This document shows positions 1 to 37,973 of a stretch of 64,000 nt of DNA, one piece after another; the first letter of the stretch is position 1; the number at the start of each line of letters is the position of its first letter. This DNA comes from Botryllus schlosseri. Its lineage: Eukaryota. Below the pieces are notes generated by a model, which was not told the DNA's origin, did no database searches, and saw only the letters and a list, made by a program, of their open reading frames with translations. The translations under genes and the position numbers were made by a program. Location of the stretch: contig CM119384.1 of NCBI GenBank assembly GCA_051294905.1, positions 11,284,001-11,348,000 of the forward strand. The letters run 5' to 3'.

Positions 1-1224
1 ACGCCGGTAACATTGTGTTCATTTACCAACCAACAAGAACAAAATAATGCATGTGGGTAGGTACCAGGCATCTAGTCTGAAAGCCAGTCATGTGCATGAT
101 TTTGTTTCAGCAACAAATTCAATTTCGCTGACAGAAAACATCCATTACCATAATTGAATCATGTACCAGGATTGATTTATAGTTCAAACGGGTCATGATC
201 TGTTTCAATTGGAGCATAGATAGTAGTACATCATCATCACCCCCAACAAGATTTCAAATTTTATTCATACATTATTCAAAAAAGAGCTGAGAAACAAGTT
301 TTGAAAACCTGCAGACGCTTTACTGCGAAGGAATCTATGAATATAAATAAATATCAATGAACATTCCATTCACATTCGCACAATTTTATCGATGCCTCCT
401 TATAAGTGAATCACATATTCCTAAAACAAACTGAACAGGTAAATACATCTGGTCACCGGCAATGTAGACAGATAATTTGAAACTAAGGTAATTTACTTTT
501 CATTAGCATGTCAATAAACGTATGTCAATATTATTAGCATGTAATTGCCTTGGACTGATCTTTATCAATATAACAACTGCCGCACTTATGAAATGACCAT
601 GAGCCAGCTCCTAATACATATCATTTTCATGGGAAGAGCAAAGGCATTGCTTCTTGTACGGAGACCAAATTTACGGAATTTAGATTCGAGCTGCTGAGCA
701 ACATTGGTGAATCCAGGTATACAATACAATACAATTCACTTTCACTTCCAGTTTCAGTCTCACTGTACACCAGTTACAGAAAGTAAAAATAGAATAGATT
801 TATTATCCACATTTAAAAGTTTGTACAAGAAGTATTCATCTGTCCGTACCGTTTTTACTTAGTTACGCAATCTTGTAACCTTCGAACATGAAGTCAGGGA
901 TTACCTGTGCTATTCAAAGTCCAAATGCCAGTACTAATAACTTCCTTCCAACACTTCATCGGCAGGTAAATTTCACATTAAAGTATGGTCGTACTTTCAT
1001 CGAATGGTCTTGATTGGTATGAGTCGAGATGATGATTGCCATCACTCTCAAGCACACGAGTGTCTATATATTTGATATCTTGAAGTTCATATCAGTGCAG
1101 CCTAGAGCGATCCAAGCCCTACCGAATTCAACTATTCATATTTATTATAGTTTATAGTACAATAAAAACTTGAGCAACAAAAATGGCTATTATGCAGTCA
1201 TGCTATTACATCCAATTCACTAAC

Positions 1225-4203
1225 CGCTTGTATTATTGTTGAACGAGAAATTATTGCCAGAACGCTGCACACAGACATCAATACCATCATCCGTACTGGA
1301 GGGCTTATACTGATATGGTCCCACAATAAAATTTGGCAGGGCAAGGATTATCGATCCGATTCCAAGAAGTAGCACCCCCACACTAATCCACCGAGGCTTG
1401 TGTCTCTGACCACCTGGAAAAAGATATATAAAATGCATCAATAATAAATCTGACAAACGAAACTACATGTTTTCATAAATTCACAAATTGCCAATATGCA
1501 ATCATCATAGAAATCGAGTTGTGGTCGAATTCATTAAATGTGTCAAAATAGGTATGGATAGAGTTATAAATCCAAAGTATTGTAAATGCAAACAATTCCA
1601 CTTTTGACAAAATGACACTTAAATCGTCATAACGACATCTTGTAATTTCTGTCGCCATATTTCACCTAATTAGCATGGTGTACATATGTGCAAAATATTA
1701 TGAAGTGTCATGAAATGAACACGGAGACATGAATGACAATTCTCATTTCAACAGGCGGAATGGTTTAATAAATAGGTTTATAACGGAAATGACTTCAGAA
1801 GCTCAACTCATGTGGAATGATTACGACAGGAATTCCTGCACTCACAACTCCACAAGGGAATAGAAACACCACGACTCAAATAGCCTATGTTCCTACTAGA
1901 CATGATAGCAAGATCAATACAAAATATAGAAATGATTGATATAAAATTGATGTGGCTAGTGCATTTTGTAGAGTATTTCACTATCAAATTTCAACTTATT
2001 TTGACATATGCACCTCAAACATGAACATGACTTACTGACTTTACCTACAAGTGCACAAAGTGTACACACTGTGCAATCTGCATTGTACAGAGCACAGTTA
2101 CCCGCATTTTATCACTAGCATACATGTTAGATGATAAATCATCTAATGCCTTTATTTAATATTGCTATAGCACCATGCCACACCCCACGAGCATACAAGG
2201 GCACATGATTTGAGGCCTATTTTCTAACTGATAACTATGAAGCGGGTCGAGTCAACGAGATCAACATCTTGATAAGATATTCGGTAGTTGCCCATGTCAG
2301 CACTACAATTGGAAATAGTTCGAGACATGCAATGTCCCAACAACATTCAGATTTGGAGATGAGATAATGCTTGGTCACAAATTCCCAGCTACCCCAAATG
2401 TAACAATATGTAAATGAAAGTATTTTTTAGAGATGAGCCACAGTGTCGCACTTCAAACATCCCAGAATTGGGAAGTGTTGTTTGTATTTTGTAGTAAGGT
2501 ATCTCTCTCACTTGAGAAAGTTTTTGTTGAACAGGTCACGTAGACAGATTACATAGACAAGTTCCATCTATAAATATCACAAATCACAAAAGAATGTTTT
2601 TTACGATAAGAATCCCCCTTTTCAAAATACATCCAATTTTCATCATTCAAGACATGGATGACTGCCTCAGAAAGAATTTCGTGATTTACTGTTATCTGGG
2701 ACAACATCCGGTAGAACTTGCACCACAAATATACCTGGAAATTTGTCAATCCTTAACATAAAACGTGGCAATAAGGTAGGCTATTCAGGAAACGATGAAG
2801 AAAAATTCAAGGTCTCTTATTTACATCATATTTCGTTTCAGAATACCATAGTTTGATGGTCAGTTTCTATATCAGTGGCTCCCAACTTTTTTAGACTCAT
2901 TGCCCCCTTATCAAGCTCGACACAAGTTTGCGCCCCCATATTTACGGATCCGAAAAAAGGACTAGAAACAGAAAATTTATTCACCTAATTCTGACCGTCG
3001 GTGAATTGACTAAATATGTAGGTGCCCGTAAAACCGGTTTCTGTGTCTACTTTCCTTTGAATTGACCCTTTTGAAGTCACTTTCGCATTGTATGCAGAAT
3101 AAGCCGTCTTCACATGCATTTTTTGGCCGTCTTGATTCAATATATCTCACTGAACGTTTTAACACTTTCGTACCCCCAATCGCACCATTTGGCATTTTTG
3201 CTCTTTTGTTTCTCAAAATCGCCAATTGGGAGTGGGGGTGATATCACCCACGTTGGGAACCACTGGTCTATATTTTTCACCAGTTACAGGACAACATGTT
3301 TCCTAGGAATACCGGTATTCAAATACAATTTTTTTTTGCTAAGATTGCGAATTCATCCAGACTTCGCCACATCATTTAAAATTTCAACACCTTTCTTTTC
3401 GTAGTCTTGTTGTGTTTTGAGATTACAAAATATTTTAATATAATGATATAATAATAGAAACAATGACATATGCATAACTGCACCAACTGGATTTCAAAAT
3501 GGAATGAAACAGTTGATTATGAGAGAAGAGAAATGACGGTCTAGCAGAGCTGACGATGTGCATTAGTAATTTATCGCGATACATAAACCAACTATTGGCC
3601 AATTCAGACACTCCAGCTGTAACACAAAAAGAAACTATCATGTATACTGCATACCTAATTTGTTTTAAAAGTTCGGAAAGAGAGTTCCACTTACCAATAT
3701 AGCTAATCGGCAGAAGGCAAAGACAGCCAGCAATATCGTAGCTACTGATTATCAGTCCCGATTCCGAACTCAGTAGCTGGAAACGCCTCTCAATGGACGT
3801 AACATTAACCTGAAAATATCACAAAGTCATTACTATAAACATACTGCAGGGATTTCAAGAGACTTACCTTGACCAGTCCATTGACCAGTATTCCTTGTAC
3901 AATATTAGAAATCGTGACAAATATTAAAAACGCCTTGGCATTGTTGAAGAGAGGCTGCAGAATTGATGGTGTGAAGCAACACCATCCATACCTATAGCAT
4001 TTCCGGATGGACGATTCCGATACCGAAGACAGCGTGGTTCTATCCAAAATCTGGACACGACATTCTTGAATAAGTGGCTGATTGCTAGTGGATGTTGGTA
4101 GCTTGCCTACAGCAGCTCCATTGTAATCACCGTCCTTGTCATTTTTTGTACTTTTCACCAAATCAACTGGCGAGTCAGATGCAGTTGGTCCAGAATGATC
4201 CAT
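1225..4203 (-). CDS. SLCO4: SLCO4-family organic anion transporting polypeptide (OATP), first three coding exons; gene continues beyond the left edge of the window
   Basis: Exons (minus): 4203-3868 (ATG...NGLVK, phase 0), 3809-3695 (VNVTSIERRFQLLSSESGLIISSYDIAGCLCLLPISYI, phase 1), 1413-1225 (GGQRHKPRWISVGVLLLGIGSIILALPNF...NNTS). All junctions are GT-AG and in phase; intron 1 is 58 bp. RYGW, QG..VNG, ERRF..S..SG.I.SSYDI and HKPRW are OATP hallmarks, closest to SLCO4A1/4C1 from memory. No further exon found in 1-1224. Confidence 0.93.
2873..3265. mobile_element. hAT-type MITE (~393 bp) in SLCO intron 2
   Basis: Ends CAGTGGCTCCCAAC...GTTGGGAACCACTG; 8-bp TSD TTCTATAT/GTCTATAT (7/8). Related ends at 37647-37973 and ~15990-16089. 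Confidence 0.8.
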
Positions 4204-6390
4204 ATATCTCTCAGGTTAGGTGAATACCATAGTTGAGGGCATATTTACAAAGTATGCGAGACCTTATAACAATACAATAACATACAATTCTGAGAGCATA
4301 AAAAGATAGAACATGGATGATTGAAACTTCACCCAGGCTTCACCACCCATGTAATTTTAGCAGTGCTCTCTAGATAGAAAGATCAATAATTTAATTACAG
4401 TGACATTGGAGTTCTATAAATCATGAAAACGTGAGCGATTCAAACATAACACGGCATTTGATAGCGAGACAGTGATAAGTGGACTGTGTTCAACAATAAA
4501 TGGTACATCACCGTAAGATTTGCAGAGCATTTTAGAAGATATTGTTAGTGCAAACAAGGTAATAAGTAATGGTACAGGCTGAAATACAATATCTGGATGA
4601 GTGATACTCGACAGGTGTTCTGAAAACAATACTTCTTTGTTCATTTTGCAAGATATTATCAAGAAGTACTTGCTAACACATCACTCTTTATTATTAATTT
4701 TCAGAGGCTCTATTTGCGTGCCCAATAGAGTATTAAATGAATTATATTATTCTTGTAGAGCAACAAAAGAGAATTTATGGTGACGTAATAAAAGAAACAA
4801 CATAGTGGTGATATATCAAATTCAGTTTTTCTTTACCGGTATGCAATATCTGGTCCTGTTAAGATAAGCATAAAGTTGATATTTGGGTTCGAGGAGCGTG
4901 GATTTCAATATTCTATTACGAAAGGTTGTCCGAAACACATTGCAATCTCTATTTTCGTATAAAATTACGAATCAAGTTGTTACAGATTGAAATTCAAAGT
5001 TTACATCCAGTATTACAATGTCATTAAAGATCAATTTTGGATCAGGATTTACAGTGAATTCTAAAATTATAGTAAGAATTGAAATAAAACTGCGGGCTCT
5101 GATTGGTAAGCAAATATTCGGAGATTATTATTGGGAGATGAAATTGCGGTTACAAACAAAAGTTCAGGATTTGGACATAGATTTGTAGAGATAAGAAACA
5201 AATTGAAGTTTACATATAGGCCATGATTCGTGTTTGGTGGTCACAAAACTTCTATTGTGCACTCAGTGTGGTTCTTTTCTATTTGTTAATCCCACCACAC
5301 CTCACAATACTTTCACTAGCAGTTACGCGAGTGTCAACTCAAAATGGAAAGCTAAATCGATCATTGATTGGATTGAATTCAATTGGTCTATTAATTTATG
5401 AGTATTTAAAGCAAGTTTTACCATTGCTCATAACCTGATCCTATTGCATATAAATTAATAGTACTAATCAACAGGAGTTTCAAGACTATTTTCATTCATA
5501 ATCGTCCCTTAATCAACAAGTAGCCTACAATTATCATATACTGGTACAAAAGAAGCGCCCAATTATATCCGCATATACTGGACAGGACACTATACATGCT
5601 GACCTTGGATTTACTTTCAAGTGATTTAATTACGAAGCTTCCGTCATGCAGAGCTTCCGACAAGCTTCTATCATGCAGGTCCTCAGAACCCGCTCGAAAC
5701 CGTCGATCGCAGCGCATCGAAAGCGCGTACCGGTGCGGTGAACATTGCATCGAAACAATTTCTCTACTTCATAGTGAACACGACACACGACCACCCGGAC
5801 AACGACGAGCACTCCATAACTTTCCACAAGGCTTCACTAATACTATATGTGATGACCCTTCCAACTTTTCTGATATGGCTATCGACTAACTAAATATGAA
5901 TATTCGCGTGAACCGGAACATAGTTGTGTGCGACATTGCTATGATCCTGTTTACCGGTTCTACTTTGGCAGCACCCCGTACCATTCACGACGCTTCCATC
6001 AACGATAAAATCGCGCATTTAATACTCCGGATGCTACAGATTCCCATGCTTCATTGCATCGCGACGAAAATAAAGGGGGGGCAGTTGTTTCGGGACAGTG
6101 GAAAATGTATTCACTAGTGGGCGTTATCAGAGACATTTCATTGTAACTTCAACGAATAGTAAAGTTACCACATTATTGGTATTTCGTCTATCGGTCCTGA
6201 TACTTGAAGAATGGGGCCAGAAACTGTTAAGCTGAGGGAAATTACCATAGTATGAATGCGAGCTTTTCTATATCACTGGAGCAGAGTTGAAAAAGTGGGT
6301 TGAACCGGATTGAACTGAAAATCAATGATATATATATCATTTATATCATTGTGAAAACTGAACAGTGAACCACTTAATCTAAGAGTGAAC

Positions 6391-8266
6391 CAGGGTTGTA
6401 ACCAAGTCACAAAGCTTCGAGTCACAAGTCATTCTCACTTTTACGGTTTTGACTCGAGTCAAATCGAGTCATTTTCAATTCACCACCGAGTCAACTCCGA
6501 GTCATGGTATTATGACTCGAGTCCAAGTCCAAGTCATTGTGTTGACTGCTCAGTTTCCAGTTAAAGTCGTGTTAAAGCCACTCTTATAACTCTGTTTGGT
6601 GATATCGAATGGTTCGCATTTATAATATACTAATTTTTCTCACGTTTACCAGTTTCTGGTCGCATTTTCAAGTACCAGTACCAACAGACGTAATCCCAAT
6701 AAAGTGGTTACTTTACTGTTCTTCGAAATTACAATGAAATGTCGGTCTTGGCAAGAGGTGGTCAGTAACGAAGTACTTCTACTTTTTTCAAAAAAGTAGA
6801 AGTAGGCTACTCAAGTAGTTTTCCTCTACTTCTGGTACTTACTCAAGTAGATCTGATTTTCGCTACTTCTACTTATACTTCGTAATATTTTGTGATCTAC
6901 TTACTTACTTTTCGCTATTTTCAGTTTGTCAAGTAGAAGTAGTTCAATCTTCCAATCAGGAAGATAGCCTGAGGAATTTCGGGGCTGTTTTCATGGAGTA
7001 TCAACATTTAATTTTCATAAAAGTTTAGTTAAGCCCAGAATTTTCGTCGCGCTTCGCGCGCAGTGCTGCATTCGGAGTCACCAGTATGATTTTACGAAAG
7101 TAACGGTGAATATAATTTAGGTAGAGGGTTGGTGTGGTTCCGTTCACACCACATTGTCGCCCTTCGTCCATATCAAATAATTCAACACAGTAGGCTATAT
7201 AACGTTTGAAACTGATGTTTCGTAATCTAGCATTTACTTGCCATATTGTAATCTAGCATGACCATGGCGTGTCCAAATCTGGATAAGTGGACTCTGACTT
7301 TTTTCAGTTTTAGAGCTGTTTTAGCATACCATCTTTGAAACTTTCTGGGCTAAAAACATGAAATTCATGGTCTGCTTTTAAAAGTAGTATTTATATTTCA
7401 CTTTCGATTCCCAGTATCATATACTTTGAGTTATAATTATTATCAGTTCTTTTGTCTGGATAACATACATGTTGAAGTATATAAAAGCAAGTGTAGTAAT
7501 GCCTTTAATTTCTGGAAATAAAGCTACACAATATGGCATTTACGGTCCACCATATTTTTTATTAACGTTTACTAATCGCGCAAAGTGTTTACACCGTATC
7601 CTATACAACTTCTCCGTATTACTCTTCGACTAAACTACGAGCCTTATAATATGGGGAATGGCTCCGTACCATGCTATTTTCTAAAACGTGCTGTTCGAGA
7701 GAACAGAGGATTAGCATCGCATCTCCATATCAATACTATTATTTTCATCCCATGATGTGGACGAATACTCATGCTAGCGAAAATTGGATACCTGCTGGTA
7801 TGCATCAATATGAATCAAGCTCGTCACCTATCGCATAGCTCAATTTGCACCTTTTTACAGTCCATGTGAACGAATTAGGATCGTTTTCATAACTACTTAC
7901 TTACTTGAGTACTTTTAAAGTCAGTCAATTCTACTTCTACTTCAAGTAGTTTTAGGTTGCTTATGGAAGAAGTACTTCTACTCGTACTTGAGTAGATTTT
8001 TTCGTCGCTACTTCTACTTCTACTTGAGTAGATTTCTTGACTACTTTGACCACCTCTGCTAGGCCGGCTGAATCTCGGGTCATATGACTTGGTTCGAGCC
8101 ATGCGCAATGACTCGAGTCCAAGTCGAGTCAATATACAAATTGGCTCGAGTCGAGTCGAGTCATTTCCCTATTTTGAGAAAATGACTCAAGTCAAGTCCA
8201 GTCATCAAAAAATCGCGACTCAAGTCTGACTCGAGTCGAGTCATGACTCGAGTCAATACAACCCTG
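6391..8266. mobile_element. Non-autonomous hAT-like element with GACTCGAGTC subterminal repeats
   Basis: TIR CAGGGTTGTA...TACAACCCTG; exact 8-bp TSD GAGTGAAC (6383-6390 and 8267-8274); reiterated GACTCGAGTC/GAGTC motifs near both ends; contains nested element 6753-8058. Confidence 0.88.
6753..8058. mobile_element. Non-autonomous hAT-like element with AAGTAG/CTACTT subterminal repeats, copy 1 (nested)
   Basis: Ends (A)AGAGGTGGTCA...TGACCACCTCTG; similar along its length to 47435-48692 in the opposite orientation; TSD not clean at this copy. Confidence 0.85.
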
Positions 8267-8274
8267 GAGTGAAC

Positions 8275-8430
8275 ATAACAACTTGGACTCGGACTCGACC
8301 CACTACTAGCTCACTTGGACTCGGACTTGACTCGGTGGTGAATTCAAAATGACTCGACTTGATTCGACTCAAAACTATAAAAGTGAGATTGACTTGTGAC
8401 TCGGAACCTTGTGATTTGGTTACAACCCTG
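8275..8430 (-). mobile_element. Solo end of a second GACTCGAGTC-family element
   Basis: Reverse complement of the 6391 left end, finishing TTGGTTACAACCCTG at 8430; partner end not found. Confidence 0.7.
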
Positions 8431-9496
8431 GTAGGAGCCCAGATAAACTATACATACTATATAGTAGCCTACATATATATAATAGTTAATATATGTTCTT
8501 TAGCCAGAATGCTTCAAAGTTTGTCCACCAAAACGGTAACGGTCAGAAGTGGTGAAAAATCAGTGAACCACTTACTTTTCCAGATTCGAACACGCCACGT
8601 GCTGCCTAGATATTGCGTTAGCTTCTCATTTTATGTTCTCTTCTATTACTTTTCATTAAGTGCACATTTCCATATTCCAGCACACCAGCTGGATATGATT
8701 GAAAGAATATTCCAAATCGTTTCAACGCCTTCCTATCTGTTCATTTATAGCAATCTTATGGCGTTTTGAATCGATAAAAATATTATTAAAACCAATGATA
8801 TATATATCATTGATAAAACGAACCAAAACCATGTTATTCTTTCTCATGTTTTGCGATTTGCGAAGGAAGCTCATTAGTGTGATGAAACTGTTATTATTAT
8901 TATTGGTGAAAATGCCACCGGAAATTTCGGCTAGGGGGTCAAAGGGCTGAATATAAATACGCATGATGTAGACTACAGAATTTAACCTAGATGTAGGCTA
9001 CTCGTGTGTGCTGCCTGTGGTTGCGGAATTATTACTTATTAGGCACCAGCTTTTCGGTGCGACAAAGACGCGTCCTCAAGGGAGATCAAGTTTTGGCCAA
9101 CACGAAGTGCAATCCCAGAATGATATCCGGCGATAGAACCTTGACCGAAGATTGCGCCAGATGGCACTGTCCTTGGCTTGCAAACTATGTCCCGCGTGGA
9201 ACAAATGTAACGACATTTTTGAATCCTCCTTATTGAGTATATATAGGCCTACCACAATGTTCGCTGATGATACTCACCTCCTCTATTTCTCATCATATAC
9301 GGCTATATCAGGTGCCGTGACCACGCAGTGACCAAATGCACGAAGTGCATGAGTGGGCGGCCCACAGAATAATCTTTGCGTCAACGCCGCGAAATCCTAG
9401 TCATAAACTCCGAAAAAAATTAACCGTTAACATCGCTGGTCAACCTATTTCCAACTCGGAAAATGCGAAATACCTTGGGGTTTTACTAGACTCTAG

Positions 9497-9775
9497 AAAT
9501 TAGTAATAATTGCCAAGTTTATGTATCAGTTCCACTGCGGCCACTGCTCCGATAACTTAAATAACTTCTTTACCTCGGTAACAAAAGTGCATAAGTGCGA
9601 CACACGCGCGTCCACGTCGTCCAACTACCATATGGCGGACAAAAAAGATCACCGCTCTATCAAATATGGCAGACCTGATTTGTGGAACTGTATCTCGCCG
9701 GCTATCCGACAGTCATCGAGCATGTCCTGTCCACATTCAAGTCGAAATACAAACAATTTTTGCTGAATAAATATT
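9497..9775 (+). mobile_element. 5'-truncated CR1/L2-type LINE, C-terminus of ORF2; its 3'UTR resumes at 10740
   Basis: Translates to AKFMYQF...NFF..VTKVHKCDTR...SIKYGRPDLWN..SPAIRQSSS then (frameshift) TFKSKYKQFLLNKY, the typical post-RT tail of CR1/L2-group LINEs. The same terminus occurs at 55662-55718. Confidence 0.72.
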
Positions 9776-10739
9776 GGGGGAGATGTGGTACCGATGGATC
9801 AAAAATTGCAAAATGATCTCTGGCCCTCAAATCTTCAGCCGAGAATAGCAGATCTTTTGCTGTCTCAACACTTCGATACAAGCTCTACCTATCGCGGACA
9901 TTTACATGAATATCCGCCTTTTCAAAAAATATTTATAAACGCTTAAAATGTGTTGCTCGAACGTGCCATCGGTCCCCACCCGGTGGGTCCAAAGGCACAC
10001 GACCATGGGACCTATGAGACATACGCTCAAAAACTCAAATTTGTTAGCTTGTTTTGTTGTGTCATATAAGCTAAGCCACAGCAAGCCAATGAAGAATGTT
10101 TCGTCGCGACCTTCAAGAATAAAATAGATTATATCAACTCAAATGTTGACATAAAATCATGTTTTGATTTACGCCTAAACTTACAAAATTAATGCCACAT
10201 ACCTATTATCCCCAGTTCGACATTGTGACTTTCAAATACCTCGTAATAGCGATAAAACACCACAGGTAACTATGATATACAGCCTATATATATGTAGGCG
10301 AGTTTATGTTGTTAAGTGATTAGTTGGTCCATCTATTTTGCTTGATTTGGCTATGGTACCGTAGGTCCCCCACCCCATAAATATTGTAATTGACTTGAAA
10401 ATAGTCCCCTCGAGGATGGTATTGATTCGAAAAATATGTGCCATTATATATCCTGATACAAGCCCTATACTTCACATCAAAAATTATGACGGGTTTGTTA
10501 GTCTGAAAGGTGATATAGAAAAATGCAAATGTCGATCCAAATTTACTTTACACCCCCTAAAACGTAAATCACTCGTCACAGACCCCATAACTCACGCAGG
10601 TCGATTTTTTTTGCATGTGAGGAAAGATTCTGTCAGCATGTAATTGTAGACAAATTCACGGAGTGTAATCATGGAATTATCATGGAGAATTTTTCAAGTA
10701 TTTTCGGTCCCAGTGATCCATCGGTACCACATCTCCCCC
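9776..10739. mobile_element. Non-autonomous TIR element (~960 bp), copy 1
   Basis: ~25-bp TIR GGGGAGATGTGGTACCGATGGATCA at both ends; a second copy in opposite orientation at 45342-46302; probable TA target; superfamily unresolved. Confidence 0.85.
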
Positions 10740-11244
10740 TAATCCTATAGTATACCGGACCACGACCTGACATATGGATTTCGCCAGCGATCTATAGGCT
10801 ATACAGCGATCTTTTGAGTGTCACAATAACTTTCTCCGGAAGTCACGAAATAACAGCATACTTCCGCGAAGTAATTATAATGACAAATGGCTCGACCGAC
10901 GCTTACCCTCGAGAAACTCATGAATAATCTTACCGTGTGGAATGAACTTATAGCCCCAACATGTATAATTGCGTGCCCTCTAAATCTTTGAAGACGCCGC
11001 TTCTATCAAATCTGCTAATGATAACAAATATACAATATGCAAGTAACACTATTATTGACCAATTTCAGTCATTAAATTTTATAACCACAAAACATTATAA
11101 TACAGTTACCACATACACAATTATGTATGTGGGTATAATATTTCTATAAATATCCACCCAGCCAGAAGTTGTGATAATTACCCAATAAGGGCCCAATACC
11201 ATCGACCACGGACCACAACCACGGCCTGGACCACGATCACGACA

Positions 11245-11494
11245 GGACCACGACCTGACATATCGATCTCGCCTTCCGACACATAACACCTTTTTTGTCA
11301 CTTGTCCTTTAATATTATCTTCTTTTACTTTTCATTCAGTATGCATGCCTCCTTTTTTACATCGCCTAGGTCAGGTGGGTGTCTGATTTCGAAGACTACT
11401 CCAAGTCGTTTCGACACCTTCCTATCTTTTGTTGTATCGCAGTCTTATGGTGTATTGAAATGATGAAAATTGTAGCAATAATTTGAATTGAATT
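11245..11494 (+). mobile_element. LINE 3'UTR fragment (dispersed repeat family)
   Basis: GGACCACGACCTGACATATCGATCTCGCCTTCC...GGTGGGTGTCTGATT...short TGAAT tail; matches 55730-55996, 38620-38828, 50040-50140 and 59192-59375 (reverse). Confidence 0.7.
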
Positions 11495-12540
11495 ATTTTT
11501 TTACCATATGATTCCATGTCCATATAAAAGGAGGTTCTTTTACATCATCAAATTTTGCCACCACTCTATTATTTTTTTAGCTACACCGTTCAACCCACTA
11601 CCTAAATTATATTGAACGCTACTGTCGTAGAGATCTAGAGGTCATAGTTATGTGCGGAGCACGATGATAATAATCGTCGTTTAGTTATACTTTTATCATG
11701 AAATTTTTCATAATGCGGAAGTACGATAAAAGACTTTTCGAACAAAATTGGACCGCGATCTCGATGGCAGGTGGAAGCAATGAGAGCTTTTCCAACCCCA
11801 AGCTAGTTTTAAAAATGAACGGGGACACATCACCGGTTTCAAACGAAGGCCTCATGAACTTCGTATTAGCTACACCGCTAACTAGCCTCGATTGCTATCT
11901 GGCTCAACTAAGCCACCGTTCATGATTGAACAGTAAAATAATTATAACTACTGGCACTATAGAGATTGTAGGGTACTTGTGGTTGACAGCAAAATTTGAG
12001 CAATTTTTTTATAATAAATTAAAAAAATTCAATTGGCTCTGCGTCGGCTTCTACTAATTAGAATTTAACAAAATTTGGTGAGCAGCGTTTGTTTAGGCGG
12101 CCTAACAATTTGATCAGCGAATCACCGGAATACGGACAACAAGTTATTTTTGAACAACCCTACATCAGAGTTTATGCTGACATCGCCGACATTACGGACA
12201 TCACCAATTTACATTCACCCATTTTTAGCTTGGAACTTTGCGAACCCGAACATAATAAATCAAAGAGTTGGGTCGACGGAGCGGAATGCGTATGAAACCA
12301 CTGTGATGCTAATAGCACATCAGCAGAAATATGATGACCGCGTGAATCATTGTGAATGTACATGGATAACATGATTTTTTTCGGTCTATACAATTTCGGA
12401 ATAACTGGAATATGTGTTGCCAGATTTCAAAATTCTCAGAAAAACCGGTTGCCAGCTCATAATATTTAGAGCTGATCAACAAAAAGGATCCTGTTCCGGC
12501 AAATAGACATCCAAATGCCTACATTCTAACGATAAAACCG

Positions 12541-13875
12541 AAAAATCATATTCACCCCTCTGCGACCCCAAGGGCAGATCCACTTCTTGCTACAAGTCGA
12601 AATGACTATCCCAACATTACCCCAAAAATATTTCAGCCTTTGGAACACAATAGGGGACCCAGCAGAATCTTTTGAAAATGGATATTTTTCGAAGAAATAG
12701 GGATGCCCGTAATGATATTATAACTGATATTTAAAAAATTATTTTCACCCCTCTGCGGCCCCAAGGGCAGATCCACTTCTTGCTACAAATTGAAAAGACT
12801 ATCCCAACATTACCCCAAAAATATTTCAACCTTCGGAACACAATAGGGGACCCAGCAGAATCTTTTGAAAATGGATATTTTTCGAAGAAATGCCCGTAAT
12901 GATATTATAACGGATATTTAAAAAATCATTTTCACCCCTCTGCGACCCCAAGGGCAGATCCACTCCTTGCTACAAGTCGAAATGACTATCCCAACATTAC
13001 CCCAAAAATATTTCAGCCTTCGGAACACAATAGGGGACCCAGCAGAATCTTTTGAAAATGGATATTTTTCGAAGAAATAACCGTAATGTTATTATACCGG
13101 ATATTTAAAAAATCATTTTCACCCCTTTGCGACCTCAAGGGCAGATCCACTCCTTGCTACAAGTCGAAATGACTATTCTAACATTACCCCAAAAATATTT
13201 CAGCCTTCGGAACACAATAGGGGACCCAGCAGAATCTTTTGAAAATGAATATTTTTTCAAGTAAGAGAGATGCAAATATTGATATCATAACGGATATTTA
13301 AAATATCATATTCACCCCTCAAGGGCAGAACTACTCCTTGCTACAAGTCGAAATGACTATCCCAACATTACCCCAAAAATATTTCAGCCTTCGGAACACA
13401 ATAGGGGACCTAGCAGAATCTTTTGAAAATGGATATTTTTCGAAGAAATGCCCGTAATGATATTATAACGGATATTTAAAAAATCATTTTCACCCCTCTG
13501 CGACCCCAAGGGCAGATCCACTTTTGGCTACAAGTCGAAAAGACTATCCCAACATTACCCCAAAAATATTTCAGCCTTCGGAACACAATAGGGGACCCAG
13601 CAGAATCTTTTGAAAATGAATATTTTTTCAAGAAATAGGGATGCACATAATGATATCATAACGGATATTTAAAATATCATATTCACCCCTCTGCGGCCCA
13701 AGGGCAGAACTACACCTTGCTACCACCAGAGAATCCTATGAAAATTGATCATTTTTCAGGAAATAAACATGCTCGTACTGATATTATAACGGAAATTCGA
13801 AAAATCATATCCAACCATCTGCGGCCTCAACGGCAGAACTACACCTTACTACAAGTCGAAATGGCGATCCCAATC
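12541..13875 (+). repeat. Left-arm tandem array, 7 recognisable units of mostly 187-193 bp plus a degenerate eighth
   Basis: Anchor TTCACCCC at 12551, 12744, 12931, 13118, 13311, 13489, 13682 and degenerate at ~13808; units decay toward the element interior. Confidence 0.95.
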
Positions 13876-14039
13876 ATGAACTTTTCCGAAAAAAAAAACA
13901 CGAATAATGTAGACCCATGGCATGTTCGTTGATGTTCGACTAAAGTCAAACAATCACTTTAGATGGCACATTCACATGCAAACCAGGGATATATAGAGTT
14001 CGTCGCAAACATAGAGGATACAAGTTTCATTCGAAATCA

Positions 14040-15890
14040 GTATTCGTTCATAGTATAAATACAGAAATATCAAATTGCGAGTCCATCATCGCTTTAGCTG
14101 CAATGTAGCTGAGGCTGCGTTTGTGCATTACATATTTAATGCAGATCTCTTTCAGTATAACGTATCGGAAGAATTCATCAGCATGAAAATCGGGCTCCAA
14201 CACTTTCATCAGTTCACAATTTTTTTTGATGACCGATGGATTGAACACATTCGTGATACGTGGCGCTGAGTACGCGTGCACAGTGACAGTCGAATTGACT
14301 CACTTTCTGAAGAGTTTCTTCTGCAGGCATAACTTCGACATCAAATATCAATACGAATTTCCAGTGTCATCTTCTGGTAATAAGTCTGGCGGCGCTTTGC
14401 ACTTAGTACGCTGAGCCAATTTGAATTGCATCATCAATTTCTTGTTGATAAGAAAAGTTCCGTGAGTTTGATGATTTGGTTCCTGGCACGCGTTTCGAGG
14501 CCTTTCACACAAAGCTGTGAAGTACGAGACTAAACTGTCAGCAAAGATTTCGTCAAATTCTCGTGGTATTTTAAACATTATCATTTGGAACTCCGTGACA
14601 TTTTACATCCTGATTTCCAAATTTTCAATTGGTCTCATTCTTTTTCTCTTCACAATTTTTGGTTTTGGAGTCTCATCTTCGTTGGCGGTAGAATAATCGT
14701 CGCTTATAATCAGACGCTTATCTGGGCGTCTTACATAAAAAAATATATATCCATTCTGAGTCTTCACAGTAGATGAAACGTCACACGGCTTTCTCGATAA
14801 ACGTTATTGTCATCATACACAACTGTGGTACCATCCTTCTTCATTACGTTGGTGACGTAGTGTCCCGCGTTGACCGATTCGCCAAGCATTGAAACTATGG
14901 CGTTTAAATTGAAGCACTTGCATCCATACTTAATATGTTCCTCTGCTGCAAGGCTGTAGGAAAGAATATTGCTACGATCGTTCCTTGGTGCATGAACCAC
15001 CAATAAACTCGGAGTCGACAAGATCTGACGATGCATACCCACCACAGAGGTACATTTCAAACAAGGTTCTGTGGTCGAATCATCGAATTGCTTTCGGATA
15101 TTGTCCTCCAGTGACTCAGTTGCATTATCCCTGACAACAAGACGAATGACTGTTTTGTTTGTGGTCGATTGATTTATGAAGCCACAGAATTGGCAAGCTC
15201 CTCGAAATTCAATATGCGTGTTGCAATTCAGGTTGGCCTTTTCCAAAATTGTGGGGATATTGCTGAGCTCGAAAAATTCTATGGCGTCTTGTTGTTGTTT
15301 CGCTGGAAACTTACAAGCCTCAGCAGATTCCCTGACGGCATTTTCAATTTCCTGATCCATACTCTCCTTGCGGTTTACTAGGTTAGAAATGATTTGAGCT
15401 GTATGATTGATGGATTGGATTTCTTCAATATCTCCTGCCCAGCTACACGGAAAGCACGAAGCTACTGCGTGTACAATTGAATTAAACCAACATGTGTTTC
15501 CCATGTTTTTCAATCCTATGCCGGCGACATCTTTCAGAATGAATATTTCTTTAGATTTTTTGACATCTGGATGGACGACCTCTGATGTTCTTGCAAAATC
15601 GTAAAGAATCCAATGCCGAAAATGTGTTTGATCCAATGGGAATTTCACGGTTCCTGCTGAGCATATCACCCGGGCGACAAGGCAAACGCAAACTCCACAG
15701 CTGCTGTTGTCTACCTGCTTCAACACATTCCTTGCCTTGCACCGCGCCTGATTTGATGAGTTGATGATTTGGATCGGGAGTTTTAGCATTCGATGAAGAC
15801 GTTCTCTGAAACCTGTTTTTCGTTTTATTTGATTTCTCGTTGGTACTTTTTCTGTAACCCTCATGGAAAACAGTATCGCAATATATAGGG
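14040..15890 (-). pseudogene. Frameshifted TE-borne gene: Ulp1/SENP-like Cys motif fused to a USP (peptidase C19) domain, followed by an unknown C-terminal region
   Basis: ORF 14764-15921 contains KQVDNSSCGVCVCLVARVI...DQTHFRHWI (C48-like C-terminal half, 15691-15720), Cys box GLKNMGNTCWFNS (~15478-15516), QQDAIEF, two CxxC pairs, His box AGHYVT (14851-14865) and YDD. The terminal USP motif NGYIFFYVRR lies in another frame after ~14790. Further protein-like pieces in shifting frames run down to ~14040. Confidence 0.82.
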
Positions 15891-16439
15891 TATAGCCGAT
15901 ACGTAGCGACAAACAGCCCACTGGCTGAGGGGGTCTGGTGTTTGGTTTATCACCCTATGGGGCCAAAGACCAACGTTTTTAAGAGGGGACTGACGAAGTG
16001 CTGTTTTTCGGTTCCCAATATTTGGGGGGCGATGATCGGTGTGGAGCTTCAAAAGGGGGCGATGAGTCGAAAAAGGTTGGGAACCACTGATCTAAAATAT
16101 TGACGCGAATAACCAAAAAAGCTCTCGTATCGAGACATGGCCCCAGCGCGCGCCAGGTATCAAAGGCATGTTTACTCTCAACCACACGCGACTATAAGTA
16201 TTGTAACATTTTTACTGCGTTTAAAGGATGCTGCTCCCCCAAAAGCGAATCCTGGACTATTTTTGATCGATGGGGCTCTTATACTCTGTGGAATTCAGTG
16301 GTATGGCTGTATTGCAGGGAAACCATGGTTACCATATACCGAGCGAGATAGTGTAATGGCGATGTGTCCGGCTTCTTGATCGGGATCCTCCTATCAAGAC
16401 AAAACATTCCAGAAGTGGTTATCGTGCTATCGACGTCTA

Positions 16440-17265
16440 CAAGAACACAAAATTATTGACAGATCACGCGACTTGACGTCTGAAGAATAATAATCTGACG
16501 ATTTCGGCAATTATGGAGACTTTTTCTACAATGTTGCGTCGCTGGAAAGAAAACAGGAGCTCAAGTCGCCTTTTATTTACGATATGAGAAAATGATCAAC
16601 GAACTCAAGCACAGTGAATCATACAGAAACGGAAATTGTAAAGAAAAATTATCCGAGGAAAATGCATACTTCTCCGACATTTTTATGGAAAATTGATGTC
16701 GAAACTCGCAGAAACATCCCGCCTTTTACTTGGTGATTTATCGCGACATGTCTTTGAAAATTCTGTCACTGCTTTTTATGCAAAATATTCCAATTTCTAC
16801 AACAATCTCAAAAAGCAAAGTAATGATAAGGTAATACAGTGTATATGAAAAAACAATCGAACCCAAGGAATAATTGAGGAACATTTTTTCCAATTGAAAA
16901 ATATTTACTTTGAACATACCACATCGAAATGCTCATTGGATAAATTTATTCTAACATATCGCAACGAAGTGTCAAGGTCTTGTGAGAGATGTTGCGATAC
17001 AGTTTTCCATAAAAAGTATAAACGGTAAATCAATTAAAACGCAAAAAAAGTTTCAGGGATCGTCTTCATCGAAAGCTAAAACTTCCGATCCAAATCACCA
17101 ACTCATCAAATCAGTATTCAAGAAACGAAACAAGATAGGGAAAGTGTTAAAGAAGGTAGACAACAGCAGCTGCGGGGTTTGCATTTGCCTTGTCGCCGGG
17201 TGATATGCTCCGCACGAACCGTCAAATACCCATTGGACCAAACACATTTCCACTATTGGATTCGT
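16440..17265 (+). pseudogene. Decayed coding segment ending in an inverted partial copy of the Ulp1-like motif
   Basis: 16992-17262 is an inverted, diverged copy of 15606-15881 (KKVDNSSCGVCICLV; 1-nt deletion GCCGGG vs GCCCGGG). Upstream 16440-16990 gives protein-like stretches broken by frameshifts. The copy is cut off by the right-arm array. Confidence 0.7.
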
Positions 17266-19530
17266 TTTTAAATATCCGTTATAACATCATTACGTGCATC
17301 CCTATTTCTTGAAAAAATATCCATTTCCAAAAGATTCTGCCGGGTCCCCATTTGTGTTCCGAAGGCTGAAATATTTTTGGGGTAATGCTAGGATAGTCAT
17401 TTCGAATTGTAGCAAGAAGTGGATCTGCCCTTGGGGCCGCAGAGGGGTGAAAATGATTTTTTAAATATCCGTTATAATATCATTACGGGCATTTCTTCGA
17501 AAAATATCCATTTTCAAAAGATTCTGCTGGGTCCCCTATTGTGTTCCGAAGGTTGAACTATTTTTGGGGTAATGTTGGGATAGTCTTTTCGATTTGTAGC
17601 AAGAAGTGGATCTGCCCTTGGGGCCGCAGAGGGGTGAAAATGATTTTTTAAATATCCGTTATAATATCATTACGGGCATTTCTTCGAAAAATATCCATTT
17701 TCAAAAGATTCTGCTGGGTCCCCTATTGTGTTCCGAAGGCTGAAATATTTTTGGGGTAATGTTGGGATAGTCATTTCGACTTGTAGCAAGAAGTGGATCT
17801 GCCCTTGGGGTCGCAGAGGGGTGAAAATGATTTTTTAAATATCCGATATAATATCATCATGTTCATCTATTTCTTAGAAAAATATTCATTTTCAAAAGGT
17901 TATGCTGGGTTCCCTATTGTGTTCCGAAGACTGAAATATCTTTTGGGGTAATGTTGGGATAGTCATTTTGACTAGTAGCAATGAGTGGATCTGCCGTTGG
18001 GGTCGCAGAGGGGTGAAAATGACTTTTTAAATATCCGTTATAATATCATTACGGGCATTTCTTCGAAAAATATCCATTTTCAAAAGATTCTGCTGGGTCC
18101 CCTATTGTGTTCCGAAGGTTGAAATATTTTTGGGGTAATGTTGGGATAGTCTTTTCGATTTGTAGCAAGAAGTGGATCTGCCCTTGGGGCCGCAGAGGGG
18201 TGAAAATGATTTTTTAAATATCCGTTATAATATCATTACGGGCATTTCTTCGAAAAATATCCATTTTCAAAAGATTCTGCTGGGTCCCCTATTGTGTTCC
18301 GAAGGCTGAAATATTTTTGGGGTAATGTTGGGATAGTCATTTCGAATTGTAGCAAGAAGTGGATCTGCCCTTGGGGTCGCAGAGGGGTGAAAATGATTTT
18401 TTAAATATCCGATATAATATCATCATGTTCATCTATTTCTTAGAAAAATATTCATTTTCAAAAGGTTATGCTGGGTTCCCTATTGTGTTCCGAAGACTGA
18501 AATATCTTTTGGGGTAATGTTGGGATAGTCATTTTGACTAGTAGCAAGGAGTGGATCTGCCGTTGGGGTCGCAGAGGGGTGAAAATGACTTTTTAAATAT
18601 CCGTTATAATATCATTACGGGCATTTCTTCGAAAAATATCCATTTTCAAAAGATTCTGCTGGGTCCCCTATTGTGTTCCGAAGGTTGAAATATTTTTGGG
18701 GTAATGTTGGGATAGTCTTTTCGATTTGTAGCAAGAAGTGGATCTGCCCTTGGGGCCGCAGAGGGGTGAAAATGATTTTTTAAATATCCGTTATAATATC
18801 ATTACGGGCATTTCTTCGAAAAATATCCATTTTCAAAAGATTCTGCTGGGTCCCCTATTGTGTTCCGAAGGCTGAAATATTTTTGGGGTAATGTTGGGAT
18901 AGTCATTTCGAATTGTAGCAAGAAGTGGATCTGCCCTTGGGGTCGCAGAGGGGTGAAAATGATTTTTTAAATATCCGGTATAATATCATCATGGTAATCT
19001 ATTTCTTAGAAAAATATTCATTTTCAAAAGGTTCTGCTGGGTCCCCTATTGTGTTCCGAAGGTTGAAATATTTTTGGGGTAATGTTGGGATAGTCTTTTC
19101 GATTTGTAGCAAGAAGTGGATCTGCCCTTGGGGCCGCAGAGGGGTGAAAATGATTTTTTAAATATCCGTTATAATATCATTACGGGCATTTCTTCGAAAA
19201 ATATCCATTTTCAAAAGGTTCTGCTGGGTCCCCTATTGTGTTCCGAAGGTTGAAATATTTTTGGGGTAATGTTGGGATAGTCTTTTCGATTTGTAGCAAG
19301 AAGTGGATCTGCCCTTGGGGCCGCAGAGGGGTGAAAATGATTTTTTAAATATCCGTTATAATATCATTACGGGCATTTCTTCGAAAAATATCCATTTTCA
19401 AAAGATTCTGCTGGGTCCCCTATTGTGTTCCGAAGGTTGAAATATTTTTGGGGTAATGTTGGGATAGTCATTTCGACTTGTAGCAAGAAGTGGATCTGCC
19501 CTTGGGGTCGCAGAGGGGTGAATATGATTT
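17266..19530 (-). repeat. Right-arm tandem array, 12 units of 187-192 bp, inverted relative to the left arm, with a ~566-bp three-unit higher-order repeat
   Basis: Anchor GGGGTGAA at 17444, 17631, 17818, 18010, 18197, 18384, 18576, 18763, 18950, 19141, 19328, 19515; spacing 187,187,192,187,187,192,187,187,191,187,187. Confidence 0.95.
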
Positions 19531-20767
19531 TTCGGTTTTATCGTTAGAATGTAGGCATTTGGATGTCTATTTGCCGGAACAGGATCCTTTTTGTTGATCA
19601 GCTCTAAATATTATGAGCTGGCAACCGGTTTTTCTGAGAATTTTGAAATCTGGCAACACATATTCCAGTTATTCCGAAATTTTATAGACCGAAAAAAATC
19701 ATGTTATTCATGTACATTCACAATGATTCACGCGGTCATCATATTTCTGCTGATGTGCTATTAGCATCACAGTGGTCGTATGAATGGCGTTCGGGCGTCC
19801 ATCGTTCGACTAGATGAGGTAGATGACGGGGTTAGCAAGGAGTGGGCTCGATATTCTACAAATTCTAACATCCTAATTATGACTGGTTGATTACGTAATC
19901 AGTGTGGCAATATCTGACCACTGACCAGTAGCCTATATACCGCCTACCGGTAGTTAAGTGCTGTCCTGTCACTGATGAATGGTATCGTAGCCCATTCATA
20001 TTGAATAATAATAACGGCGTGATTTGATTTTCGCCATGCCTAATATTAATCTTATTTTTTGTGACGCTTGACTTATAAATATTTTTTGCTTATTTACCGT
20101 CCGTGTAAAAGTGCTATATTATTGACAACAGCTGACGATCACTTTGTGATTGATAGTGATCAATAATCGTCAGATTATATTTTCAGCGGATCAAGACACA
20201 CACAATAGTGCGGTAAGACACAATGCGACGTAATGAACAGATAGAAGGATGCCGAACGAGCAGTTGCGGTCTCTTAAACTGGCATCCACTGCGACCGCTA
20301 GGCCAGGCTTATAATTTTTTTGAAAGTTCAGAATTTTATAGCTGAATGATTGATATCTCTGATGAGCAGGGATCGGCACCGTCTATCCTCAACTGGTATA
20401 TTACTTTGTGTTATTATTGATATCTTAGATAATGAAATATTGATCGATAACTTCTAGAAGTCATCGATTTAATGATATTTTCACTATGTGACTTATGGAT
20501 GGTTCAAATTGATTGTGCAATAAACCCTGGAGTGATTTGATTATAGATTTTCATTCAGTGTCTCAGCATGGTGCTATTCAACAAGTTTACCAAACATTCA
20601 GGTTAAGTGCATCACTGCTGCAATGTCACTGTCTAAAGTTGGGGAGCGGGCATATTATGATATCCATTTGCTATTCTGTAATATATCCATTTGAAAGTTA
20701 TTTTCATTGTAGTATCTGTTCATTGTGTTGCAGTTTTAAGTAATAATAGCTATAGATTTTAACACCT

Positions 20768-35957
<15,190 letters not shown>

Positions 35958-37646: not shown

Positions 37647-37973
37647 CAGTGGTTGCCAACCTTTTTCGGCTCATCGCCACCTCACCAAGCTCGATAAATA
37701 TTTATCGCCCCTATATTTTCGGTCCCGAAAAAGAGCTCATATAAACGGGAAATTTATACAGCTGAACAGATCGCCGATAAAATGACTGTAAAGAGGTCAA
37801 AGTTCGTGACGAGACCTGAAAATCCCGGTACCTGAGGATAGTATGTGGTGAGTTGACATTTTCTTTCAGAATAACCCCTTTTTCACACGTATTTTGTGCC
37901 GGTTACCGGGTAATTAAATATATCTAACTCAGCGTTCTACCATTTTCGCCACCTTAGGACTTGGGAACCACTG
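37647..37973. mobile_element. hAT-type MITE (~327 bp)
   Basis: CAGTGGTTGCCAAC...TTGGGAACCACTG; TSD TTCTAGGG/TTCTAGAA (6/8); same family as 2873-3265. Confidence 0.75.

What the first reader, a model, noticed from the sequence alone, without database searches (positions are those of the whole stretch)
12297..19776. 7.5-kb foldback transposon with modular TIRs, exact 8-bp TSD and no visible transposase
Seen: ACC.../...GGT termini, ~250-bp unique outer TIRs, then inverted arrays of 187-193-bp units, a ~3.4-kb interior, and CGTATGAA on both flanks. Known: long TIRs built from tandem repeats define foldback elements (Drosophila FB, Galileo, Tetris; sea urchin TU), which belong to different superfamilies. 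An 8-bp TSD is made by hAT, P, Merlin, some MULEs and Zisupton/KDZ, but an ACCACTG terminus is not a standard hAT or P end. Inference: this is a non-autonomous member of a family that is hard to place and may be undescribed. An 8-bp TSD plus a Ulp1-type motif would fit a Zisupton/KDZ or MULE relative.
Basis: partly seen in the sequence, partly recalled or inferred. Interest (0 to 1): 0.85.

Follow-up and report, generated by a model that had tools for sequence, protein, structure and literature searches.

The report
Defective Mutator/NOF-type foldback transposon copy
This is a real 7.5-kb jumping gene that can no longer move by itself: a broken, rearranged copy of a Mutator/NOF-type "foldback" transposon whose intact relatives encode one giant protein joining a transposase to two protein-tag-removing proteases. 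It is an ordinary member of a little-described family.

Summary
Window 12297-19776 has ACCACTGTG.../...CACAGTGGT ends and a 402-nt, 99% inverted repeat, of which the outer 244 nt are unique. Inside lie inverted arrays of 187-nt units, a 3.4-kb interior, and an exact 8-bp duplication (CGTATGAA) on both flanks.

"No visible transposase" is only partly right. The interior keeps a roughly 170-codon remnant of the transposase C-terminus, including the last catalytic (E) block. On the other strand it keeps a SUMO-protease Cys-box plus a ubiquitin-protease (USP) domain in a 396-codon open frame. The D1/D2 catalytic blocks are absent, so the copy is non-autonomous.

Full-length relatives encode PHD, DDE transposase, Ulp1 and USP in one protein (one is 2074 aa). 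Their core is Mutator-type: the best fold match is the Drosophila NOF-FB protein, followed by FAR1, ZSWIM and IS256 proteins. It is not KDZ/Zisupton, hAT or P.

Five relatives from other assemblies show the same layout: 8-bp duplications (6 of 6 including this one), ACCAC[T/C][G/A]T ends, and inverted arrays of 194-208-bp units. Read contigs show the ends are multi-copy in this species and present in two other species labels.

This scan had already described intact NOF/Rehavkus-type relatives on other DNA of this genome (s1-234232, s1-300845). Verdict: new member of a known kind, moderate interest.

The parts
12289..12296 (.). left copy of the 8-bp target-site duplication, CGTATGAA
12297..12540 (+). 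left outer unique terminal inverted repeat, beginning ACCACTGTGATGC
   Evidence: Contigs of other copies start exactly at 12297.
12541..13880 (+). left subterminal array, about 7 units of 187-193 nt, degenerating inwards
14096..14758 (-). frameshifted remnant of the protein's C-terminal tail; the last USP strand (NGYIFFY) is out of frame
   Evidence: tblastn to P0004 residues 556-780
14767..15954 (-). 396-codon open frame holding a Ulp1 Cys-box (QVDNSSCGVCVC) followed by a USP/UCH domain. The Cys box, QQD motif, zinc-ribbon cysteines and His box are kept. It is the only open frame of 150 aa or more in the 64-kb window.
   Evidence: Pfam UCH E 7e-13; family profile E 1e-27
15603..15890 (-). copy A of an internal inverted duplication (transposase tail to Ulp1 Cys-box)
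   Evidence: 86% to copy A'
15912..16110 (+). fragment of an unrelated dispersed repeat, nested or captured as filler
16494..17025 (+). frameshifted remnant of the transposase C-terminal part, including the catalytic E block NNRTQGIIEEHF (from 16849)
   Evidence: tblastn to P0003 residues 1265-1360 at 38% and to P0080 residues 196-368; family profile positions 673-846, E 3e-11
16975..17266 (+). copy A' of the internal inverted duplication, with a second Ulp1 Cys-box at 17147-17197; cut off by the right array
17265..19532 (-). right subterminal array: 12 units of 187-191 nt in inverted orientation, with a 566-nt higher-order repeat
19533..19776 (-). right outer unique terminal inverted repeat, ending CACAGTGGT
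19777..19784 (.). right copy of the 8-bp target-site duplication, CGTATGAA

Best explanation
This is a non-autonomous, internally deleted and rearranged copy of a Mutator-superfamily foldback transposon of the NOF/Rehavkus type. Intact relatives encode one giant protein: PHD finger, Cys-rich region, DDE transposase, Ulp1 (SUMO-type) protease and USP (ubiquitin-type) protease.

What is shown. The copy keeps complete ends: an ACCACTGT terminus, a 244-nt unique inverted repeat, and inverted 187-nt arrays. It has lost the PHD finger, the D1 and D2 catalytic blocks and the His/Asp half of Ulp1. What remains is the transposase E block, two inverted copies of the Ulp1 Cys-box segment, and a USP domain that is nearly intact but frameshifted near its end.

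What is inferred. It must be moved in trans by a full-length relative. That transposase would recognise the conserved terminal motif (about ACCACTGTNATTCTGGCAGAA), excise the element, and re-insert it across an 8-bp staggered cut. The subterminal arrays probably give extra transposase binding or pairing, and they drive the inversions and unequal exchanges seen inside the element. This copy inserted fairly recently: its arms differ at about 1% of positions. It lies about 1.1 kb upstream of a CaMKI kinase-domain exon, in intron 1 or the 5' region.
For: Structure and duplication.

Transposase, Ulp1 and USP remnants. The profile of the family matches only positions 673-846 and 1103-1449, so D1 and D2 are absent.

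Full-length relative: P0003 is 2074 aa and intronless, with a PHD finger, the motifs DIVYFDATGS, IMIDGSMAMWN, NCFSHAMR and NNRTQGIIEQHF, a Ulp1 Cys-box, and a UCH domain.

Mutator placement rests on four lines. The Foldseek best hit is P16320, the NOF-FB protein (E 2.9e-11), followed by FAR1/FHY3, ZSWIM, ALPHA3 and IS256-family transposases. The best PDB hit is ISCth4, an IS256-family enzyme. Pfam MULE gives sub-threshold hits in 3 of 13 members. All the best named ESM Atlas clusters shown but two carry Pfam MULE, and those two are SWIM-type.

Same ends in relatives that carry the gene: L002, L003, L005, L006 and L007 all have exact 8-bp duplications, ACCAC[T/C][G/A]T termini and inverted arrays of 194-208-bp units.

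Multi-copy status: summed contig depth over the inverted repeat is about 40-100 times the unique flank. There are many variant contigs, contigs and loose ends start exactly at 12297, and two other species labels hold the sequence.

Literature: Rehavkus elements are foldback MULE relatives with a PHD finger and subterminal tandem repeats (PMC6446971; 10.1101/2024.12.02.626372).
Against: No autonomous copy with matching ends was shown in this genome; I could not search the assembly. The window's remnants are only 26-40% identical to the database relatives. The AlphaFold model is poor overall (mean pLDDT 53; only the RNase-H core reaches 70-88), and the TM-scores are low. The Pfam MULE hits are below the curated cut-off. 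Contig depth is not a copy number, and the best-holding run may be the assembly's own sample. Published Rehavkus and FB elements make 9-bp duplications, not 8-bp.
Confidence: 0.85

Rival explanations
1. It is a Zisupton/KDZ-type element, the reader's other option: 8-bp duplication plus a Ulp1 domain.
For: Zisupton makes 8-bp duplications (PMC12730594). The relatives carry Ulp1.
Against: No KDZ, CxC or SWIM Pfam family was hit in any relative, even at E up to 10. Fold and language-model neighbours are NOF, FAR1, ZSWIM, IS256 and MULE.
Confidence: 0.03
2. It is a hAT- or P/Galileo-type foldback element.
For: hAT and P make 8-bp duplications. Galileo has long modular inverted repeats. Hermes appears weakly in the PDB fold search (E 5e-3).
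Against: No BED, hAT-dimerisation, THAP or Tnp_P_element domain was found. Hermes ranks below the IS256-family enzyme, and NOF/FAR1 dominate the Swiss-Prot search.
Confidence: 0.03
3. The copy is not fully dead cargo: its 396-codon USP frame is kept because a stand-alone deubiquitinase helps the element or the host.
For: It is the only open frame of 150 aa or more in 64 kb. The USP Cys, QQD and His boxes are intact. The neighbouring duplicated segment is 14% diverged and broken, yet this frame stays open. Some RNA-labelled runs hold 5-13% of its words.
Against: The last USP strand (NGYIFFY) is out of frame. The Ulp1 half is deleted. There is no ATG start; the first start codon in frame is GTG. 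The small share in RNA runs may come from DNA or from other copies.
Confidence: 0.08
4. It is an assembly artefact or a local inverted duplication, not a mobile element.
For: Long inverted tandem arrays are prone to misassembly. No long read spanning the structure was examined.
Against: The 8-bp duplication is exact. A contig at single-copy depth bridges the left junction, 11700-12325. The same ends bound five gene-carrying relatives in other assemblies.
Confidence: 0.02

Closest known systems
Rehavkus elements (Repbase; treated as the sister group of, or as part of, the MULE superfamily: PMC6446971; Tribolium Rehavkus in bioRxiv 10.1101/2024.12.02.626372)
   Same: Foldback layout with long inverted ends and variable numbers of subterminal tandem repeats. 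Single giant transposase ORF with a PHD finger (seen in the full-length relatives). Mutator-type core.
   Different: The duplication is 8 bp in 6 of 6 elements here, against 9 bp reported. The relatives add Ulp1 and USP protease domains. Direct sequence comparison with Repbase Rehavkus was not possible.
Drosophila Foldback (FB) with NOF (Swiss-Prot P16320)
   Same: Best structural match of the transposase core (E 2.9e-11). Inverted ends built from tandem repeats. Most copies lack the gene.
   Different: Only 17% identity in the aligned part. From my own knowledge, not tested here, FB repeats are 10-31 bp, not about 190 bp, FB makes 9-bp duplications, and no Ulp1/USP domains are described for NOF.
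Plant KI-MULEs (Ulp1-carrying Mutator-like elements)
   Same: A Mutator-type element carrying a Ulp1 (C48) protease domain.
   Different: Plant lineage, with no USP domain and no foldback arrays. This comparison rests on my own knowledge and was not tested here.
Zisupton (KDZ group)
   Same: 8-bp duplication (PMC12730594). From my own knowledge, not tested here, its transposase also carries a Ulp1 domain.
   Different: The transposase core here is Mutator/IS256-like, with no KDZ or CxC domains.

Membership tests
MULE (Mutator-like) superfamily | DDE RNase-H core of the Mutator/IS256 type, with a C(2)H motif after the second D | tested here: met
   Tested in the full-length relatives. The motifs D, D, CFSH and E are present. 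Foldseek returns NOF, FAR1, ZSWIM and IS256 and ISCth4. ESM Atlas neighbours carry MULE. Pfam MULE is only sub-threshold. The window copy itself keeps only the E block.
MULE (Mutator-like) superfamily | Target-site duplication of about 8-11 bp, and long terminal inverted repeats | tested here: met
   8 bp in 6 of 6 elements. Outer inverted repeats are about 140-310 nt plus the arrays. 8-bp MULE groups are known, for example Spectre (PMC6446971).
Rehavkus | PHD finger in the transposase protein | tested here: met
   PHD is present in P0003, P0071, P0073 and P0082. It is absent from the window copy, where it has been deleted.
Rehavkus | Subterminal tandem repeats (minisatellite) inside long inverted ends | tested here: met
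   Window. Loci L002-L007.
Rehavkus | 9-bp target-site duplication | tested here: not met
   Exactly 8 bp in all six elements.
Rehavkus | Sequence clustering with Repbase Rehavkus transposases | not testable with these tools
   Neither Repbase nor Dfam is available.
Drosophila FB-NOF | Homology of the transposase to the NOF protein | tested here: met
   Met at fold level only: P16320 is the top hit, E 2.9e-11, probability 1.00, 17% identity over 419 columns. The model is of low confidence.
Zisupton/KDZ | KDZ transposase domain with CxC clusters or SWIM | tested here: not met
   No such Pfam family was hit at E up to 10 in P0003, or at E up to 1 in 13 members. Structural neighbours are MULE-type.
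hAT | BED finger and hAT C-terminal dimerisation domain | tested here: not met
   Hermes is only a weak fold match.
P / Galileo | THAP domain and P-element transposase domain | tested here: not met

The most novel reading that the evidence does not exclude
The PHD-DDE-Ulp1-USP elements may form an undescribed branch of NOF/Rehavkus-type Mutator transposons. Its marks would be an invariant 8-bp duplication, a conserved terminal motif of about 21 nt (ACCACTGTNATTCTGGCAGAA), and subterminal units whose length (187-208 bp, about one nucleosome repeat) is conserved across six families while their sequence is not. That would suggest that chromatin spacing, together with the element's own PHD reader and its two Ub/SUMO proteases, is part of how these transposons work.
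Probability: 0.25. Interest if true: 0.6.

Novelty: new member of a known kind. Interest (0 to 1): 0.33.

Why it matters
The copy itself is ordinary: a dead passenger of a Mutator-type foldback family, sitting near a CaMKI exon. Its value is as a clean reference for that family's ends. Together with five gene-carrying relatives, it fixes the terminus, the 8-bp duplication and the array layout of the PHD-transposase-Ulp1-USP elements. This gives a ready donor substrate for testing whether the two proteases and the repeat arrays matter for transposition. It also helps repeat annotation of this genome, where the 187-nt unit is very abundant.

Tried and rejected
- The word-index protein search with the USP frame found nothing. 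The exhaustive HMMER search found only distant relatives.
- A profile search added only fragments.
- Pfam on the relatives' transposase core gave no hit, and later only sub-threshold MULE hits.
- A PDB sequence search with the family profile hit only PHD fingers, and SENP2 and USP35 weakly.
- Rfam found nothing in 11000-21000.
- No DNA similarity was found between the window element and any relative's ends or arrays.
- No k-mer is shared between the repeat units of the six families, and no copy of the terminal motif lies inside the units.
- The ACCACT matches in L001 are in the wrong orientation and are probably chance. The left end of L004 lies outside the fetched DNA.
- A search of earlier findings by sequence was blank, which means nothing.
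- The CACTGTG at the terminus resembles a CACTA or Transib/RSS heptamer. I rejected this because the duplication places the element's end two bases further out, and the transposase is Mutator-type.
Full report
**Observation**

The two arms, 12297-12698 and 19375-19776, are 402 nt long and 99% complementary. The ends read ACCACTGTG... and ...CACAGTGGT, and the 30-nt terminus occurs nowhere else in the window, with 0 expected by chance.

CGTATGAA stands immediately outside both ends, at 12289-12296 and 19777-19784. The ninth base differs on each side, so the duplication is exactly 8 bp.

- The outer 244 nt (12297-12540) are unique sequence.
- Next come inverted arrays of 187-193-nt units.
- The left array has about 7 units (12541 to about 13880) and degenerates inwards.
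- The right array has 12 units (17265-19532), including a 566-nt block of three units repeated three times.
- The arms are therefore unequal in length, which points to unequal exchange within the arrays.

**The interior (about 13881-17264) is not empty of transposon genes**

The minus strand carries the only open frame of 150 aa or more in the whole 64-kb window: 14767-15954, 396 codons.

- It matches Pfam UCH (a ubiquitin-specific protease, family C19) at E 7e-13.
- It keeps the Cys box GNTCWFNS, the QQD motif, the zinc-ribbon cysteines and the His box GHYV.
- The USP domain is preceded by QVDNSSCGVCVC, which in relatives is the catalytic Cys-box of a Ulp1/SENP-type protease.
- The last USP strand (NGYIFFY) and the C-terminal tail follow in other frames (14096-14803), so the gene is decaying.

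On the plus strand, 16494-17025 is a frameshifted remnant of the C-terminal part of a transposase.

- It includes the block NNRTQGIIEEHF.
- It is 38% identical to residues 1265-1360 of a full-length relative.
- A profile of the family confirms it (E 3e-11).

This fragment runs into a second, inverted copy of the Ulp1 Cys-box segment (16975-17266, 86% identical to 15603-15890). The right array cuts that copy off.

The family profile finds nothing else in the window.

- The D1 and D2 catalytic blocks and the PHD finger are gone.
- About 255 profile positions, the His/Asp half of Ulp1, are missing from both inverted copies.
- That deletion therefore predates the inversion.

Between the two halves lies about 540 bp of other DNA, including a fragment of a dispersed repeat also seen at 37.6 and 40.5 kb. 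The copy cannot encode an active transposase.

**Relatives**

An exhaustive HMMER search with the USP frame found only 70 proteins, the best at 39% identity. Several of them cover the Ulp1 tail and the USP domain together.

One relative, P0003, is a 2074-aa intronless ORF on a marine metagenome scaffold. Its parts, in order, are:

- a PHD finger;
- a Cys-rich region;
- a DDE-like core with the motifs DIVYFDATGS, IMIDGSMAMWN, NCFSHAMR and NNRTQGIIEQHF;
- a Ulp1-like domain;
- a UCH domain.

Searches with its core found 16 further proteins. All are unannotated. They come from ENA assemblies, one JGI contig, and the tunicate Styela clava.

**Superfamily**

Pfam does not recognise the core at its thresholds. 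Four lines of evidence nevertheless agree on Mutator.

- Three of 13 members give weak MULE (PF10551) hits over the second-D region.
- Foldseek was run on an AlphaFold model that is poor overall (mean pLDDT 53) but reaches 70-88 in the RNase-H core.
  - Its best Swiss-Prot hit is P16320, the 120.7-kDa protein of the Drosophila NOF-FB element (E 2.9e-11).
  - Behind it come FAR1/FHY3, ZSWIM1/3/9, K. lactis ALPHA3 and IS256-family transposases.
- The best solved structure is ISCth4, an IS256-family enzyme.
- Of the ten best named ESM Atlas clusters shown, eight carry Pfam MULE; the other two are SWIM-type.

No KDZ/CxC, hAT, THAP/P or Merlin domain appears anywhere.

Two earlier follow-ups of this scan, on other DNA of the same genome (s1-234232 and s1-300845), had called intact relatives "NOF/Rehavkus". 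I took the name from them and tested the placement independently.

Published descriptions fit the architecture. Rehavkus elements are foldback MULE relatives with a PHD finger, long inverted ends and variable subterminal tandem repeats (PMC6446971; bioRxiv 10.1101/2024.12.02.626372).

**The ends link this copy to the gene-carrying relatives**

I fetched the DNA around six relatives. Five contain both ends of the element.

| Locus | Element span | Length | Target duplication |
|---|---|---|---|
| L002 | 545-19317 | 18.8 kb | GCCCAGGC |
| L003 | 6566-18215 | 11.65 kb | GAATCGAT |
| L005 | 995-15298 | 14.3 kb | GTTAAAAT |
| L006 | 6859-17804 | 10.9 kb | GATTGTTT |
| L007 | 1692-20921 | 19.2 kb | GTCCTGGA |

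- All five have exact 8-bp duplications and termini ACCAC[T/C][G/A]T. These termini continue as about NATTCTGGCAGAA.
- All five have an outer unique inverted repeat of about 140-310 nt and inverted arrays of 194-208-nt units.
- The window copy has the same first 13 nt, then an insertion of about 11 nt before GCAGAAAT.

These loci share only about 65% nucleotide identity with each other, and only in the coding region. They share no DNA with the window. The common ends are therefore a conserved family trait, not recent copies.

The repeat units have no sequence or k-mer in common across families, yet all lie between 187 and 208 nt.

The 8-bp duplication differs from the 9 bp reported for Rehavkus. 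It is still within the MULE range (Spectre: 8 bp; PMC6446971).

**Mobility in this genome**

I laid Logan contigs of four runs on 11700-12740.

- The unique flank has depth 14.4 in the best run, and one contig at that depth bridges the left junction (11700-12325).
- Summed depth over the outer inverted repeat is about 600-1500, with many variant contigs.
- Depth over the 187-nt unit reaches 28,000.
- Contigs and loose ends begin exactly at 12296/12297, including in a run labelled as a different species.
- Two of the few differences between the arms (12391 and 12641) are private to the left arm, whereas all other contigs agree with the right arm. They arose after insertion, and the arms differ by only about 1% overall.

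Depth is not a copy number, and the best run may be the assembly's own sample. Even so, the family is clearly multi-copy and shared with related species.

**Context**

CaMKI exons lie on the plus strand, at about 20930-21058, 24600-24750, 25960-26100 and 29620. The element therefore sits about 1.1 kb upstream of the exon encoding GAFSKV...VAIKC. By inference this is intron 1 or the 5' region.

**Mechanism**

*Shown:*
- The ends are complete.
- The transposase is dead.
- The ends and the duplication length match those of gene-carrying relatives.
- The sequence is multi-copy.

*Inferred:*
- The copy is moved in trans by a full-length relative whose Mutator-type transposase binds the conserved terminal motif and integrates across an 8-bp stagger.
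- The arrays give extra binding or pairing. The Tribolium preprint cites work showing that more repeats raise excision.
- The arrays also promote the inversion, deletion and unequal exchange recorded in the interior.
- The roles of the PHD reader and of the Ulp1 and USP proteases in the intact protein are untested.

**Verdict**

This is a real, correctly observed foldback transposon copy. It is non-autonomous and placeable: a new member of the Mutator/NOF-Rehavkus kind, not an unplaceable new family. The wider clade may be undescribed. Its traits are the 8-bp duplication, the conserved terminus, the units of about 200 nt and the double protease. I could not check Repbase or Dfam, and the scan had already reported its intact members.

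Noticed in passing
window 11980-12189: A different, very high-copy repeat of about 210 bp sits in the left flank. Summed contig depth reaches 10,000-41,000 against 14 for unique DNA. Many contigs skip 77-115 nt inside it, so it looks like a MITE- or SINE-like family with deletion variants.
   Followed up: no
window 15912-16110; also 37639-37736 and 40570-40631: A dispersed repeat fragment ending in ...GAAAAAGGTTGG[G/C]AACCACTG lies between the two halves of the element's interior and recurs twice in CaMKI introns. It is either nested or captured as filler DNA.
   Followed up: partly
window 12541-13880 and 17265-19532; L002, L003, L005, L006, L007 arrays: Subterminal repeat units of six divergent families are all 187-208 nt long, yet share no sequence or k-mer. 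Unit length appears to be conserved without sequence conservation.
   Followed up: partly
window 17869-19079: The right array grew by repeating a 566-nt block of three units (187 + 188 + 191 nt). Identical variant units recur at 17869, 18435 and 19001.
   Followed up: partly
L005 995-1010: The left terminus of this relative has lost 5 nt (ACCACTGTAATT has become ACTAATT), although its 8-bp duplication is intact. The end is probably immobilised.
   Followed up: no
L002 4072-7559: An LTR retrotransposon (RT, RNase H and integrase gene) is inserted inside the left 194-nt array of the relative.
   Followed up: no
window 20894-21058, 24591-24800, 25941-26183, 29610-29795: CaMKI kinase-domain exons on the plus strand ([13 protein letters not shown]...HRDLK, DFG, GYPPF). 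The transposon lies about 1.1 kb upstream of the first of these.
   Followed up: partly
A1 profile positions 11-70 (PHD of P0071, P0073, P0081, P0082 and P0003 residues 504-534): By sequence, the family's PHD finger is closest to PHD fingers such as those of BPTF, DIDO1, PHF2/PHF8, Spp1 and EBS/SHL. I know several of these as H3K4me3 readers, though that was not tested here. It hints at chromatin-guided behaviour of the intact transposase.
   Followed up: no
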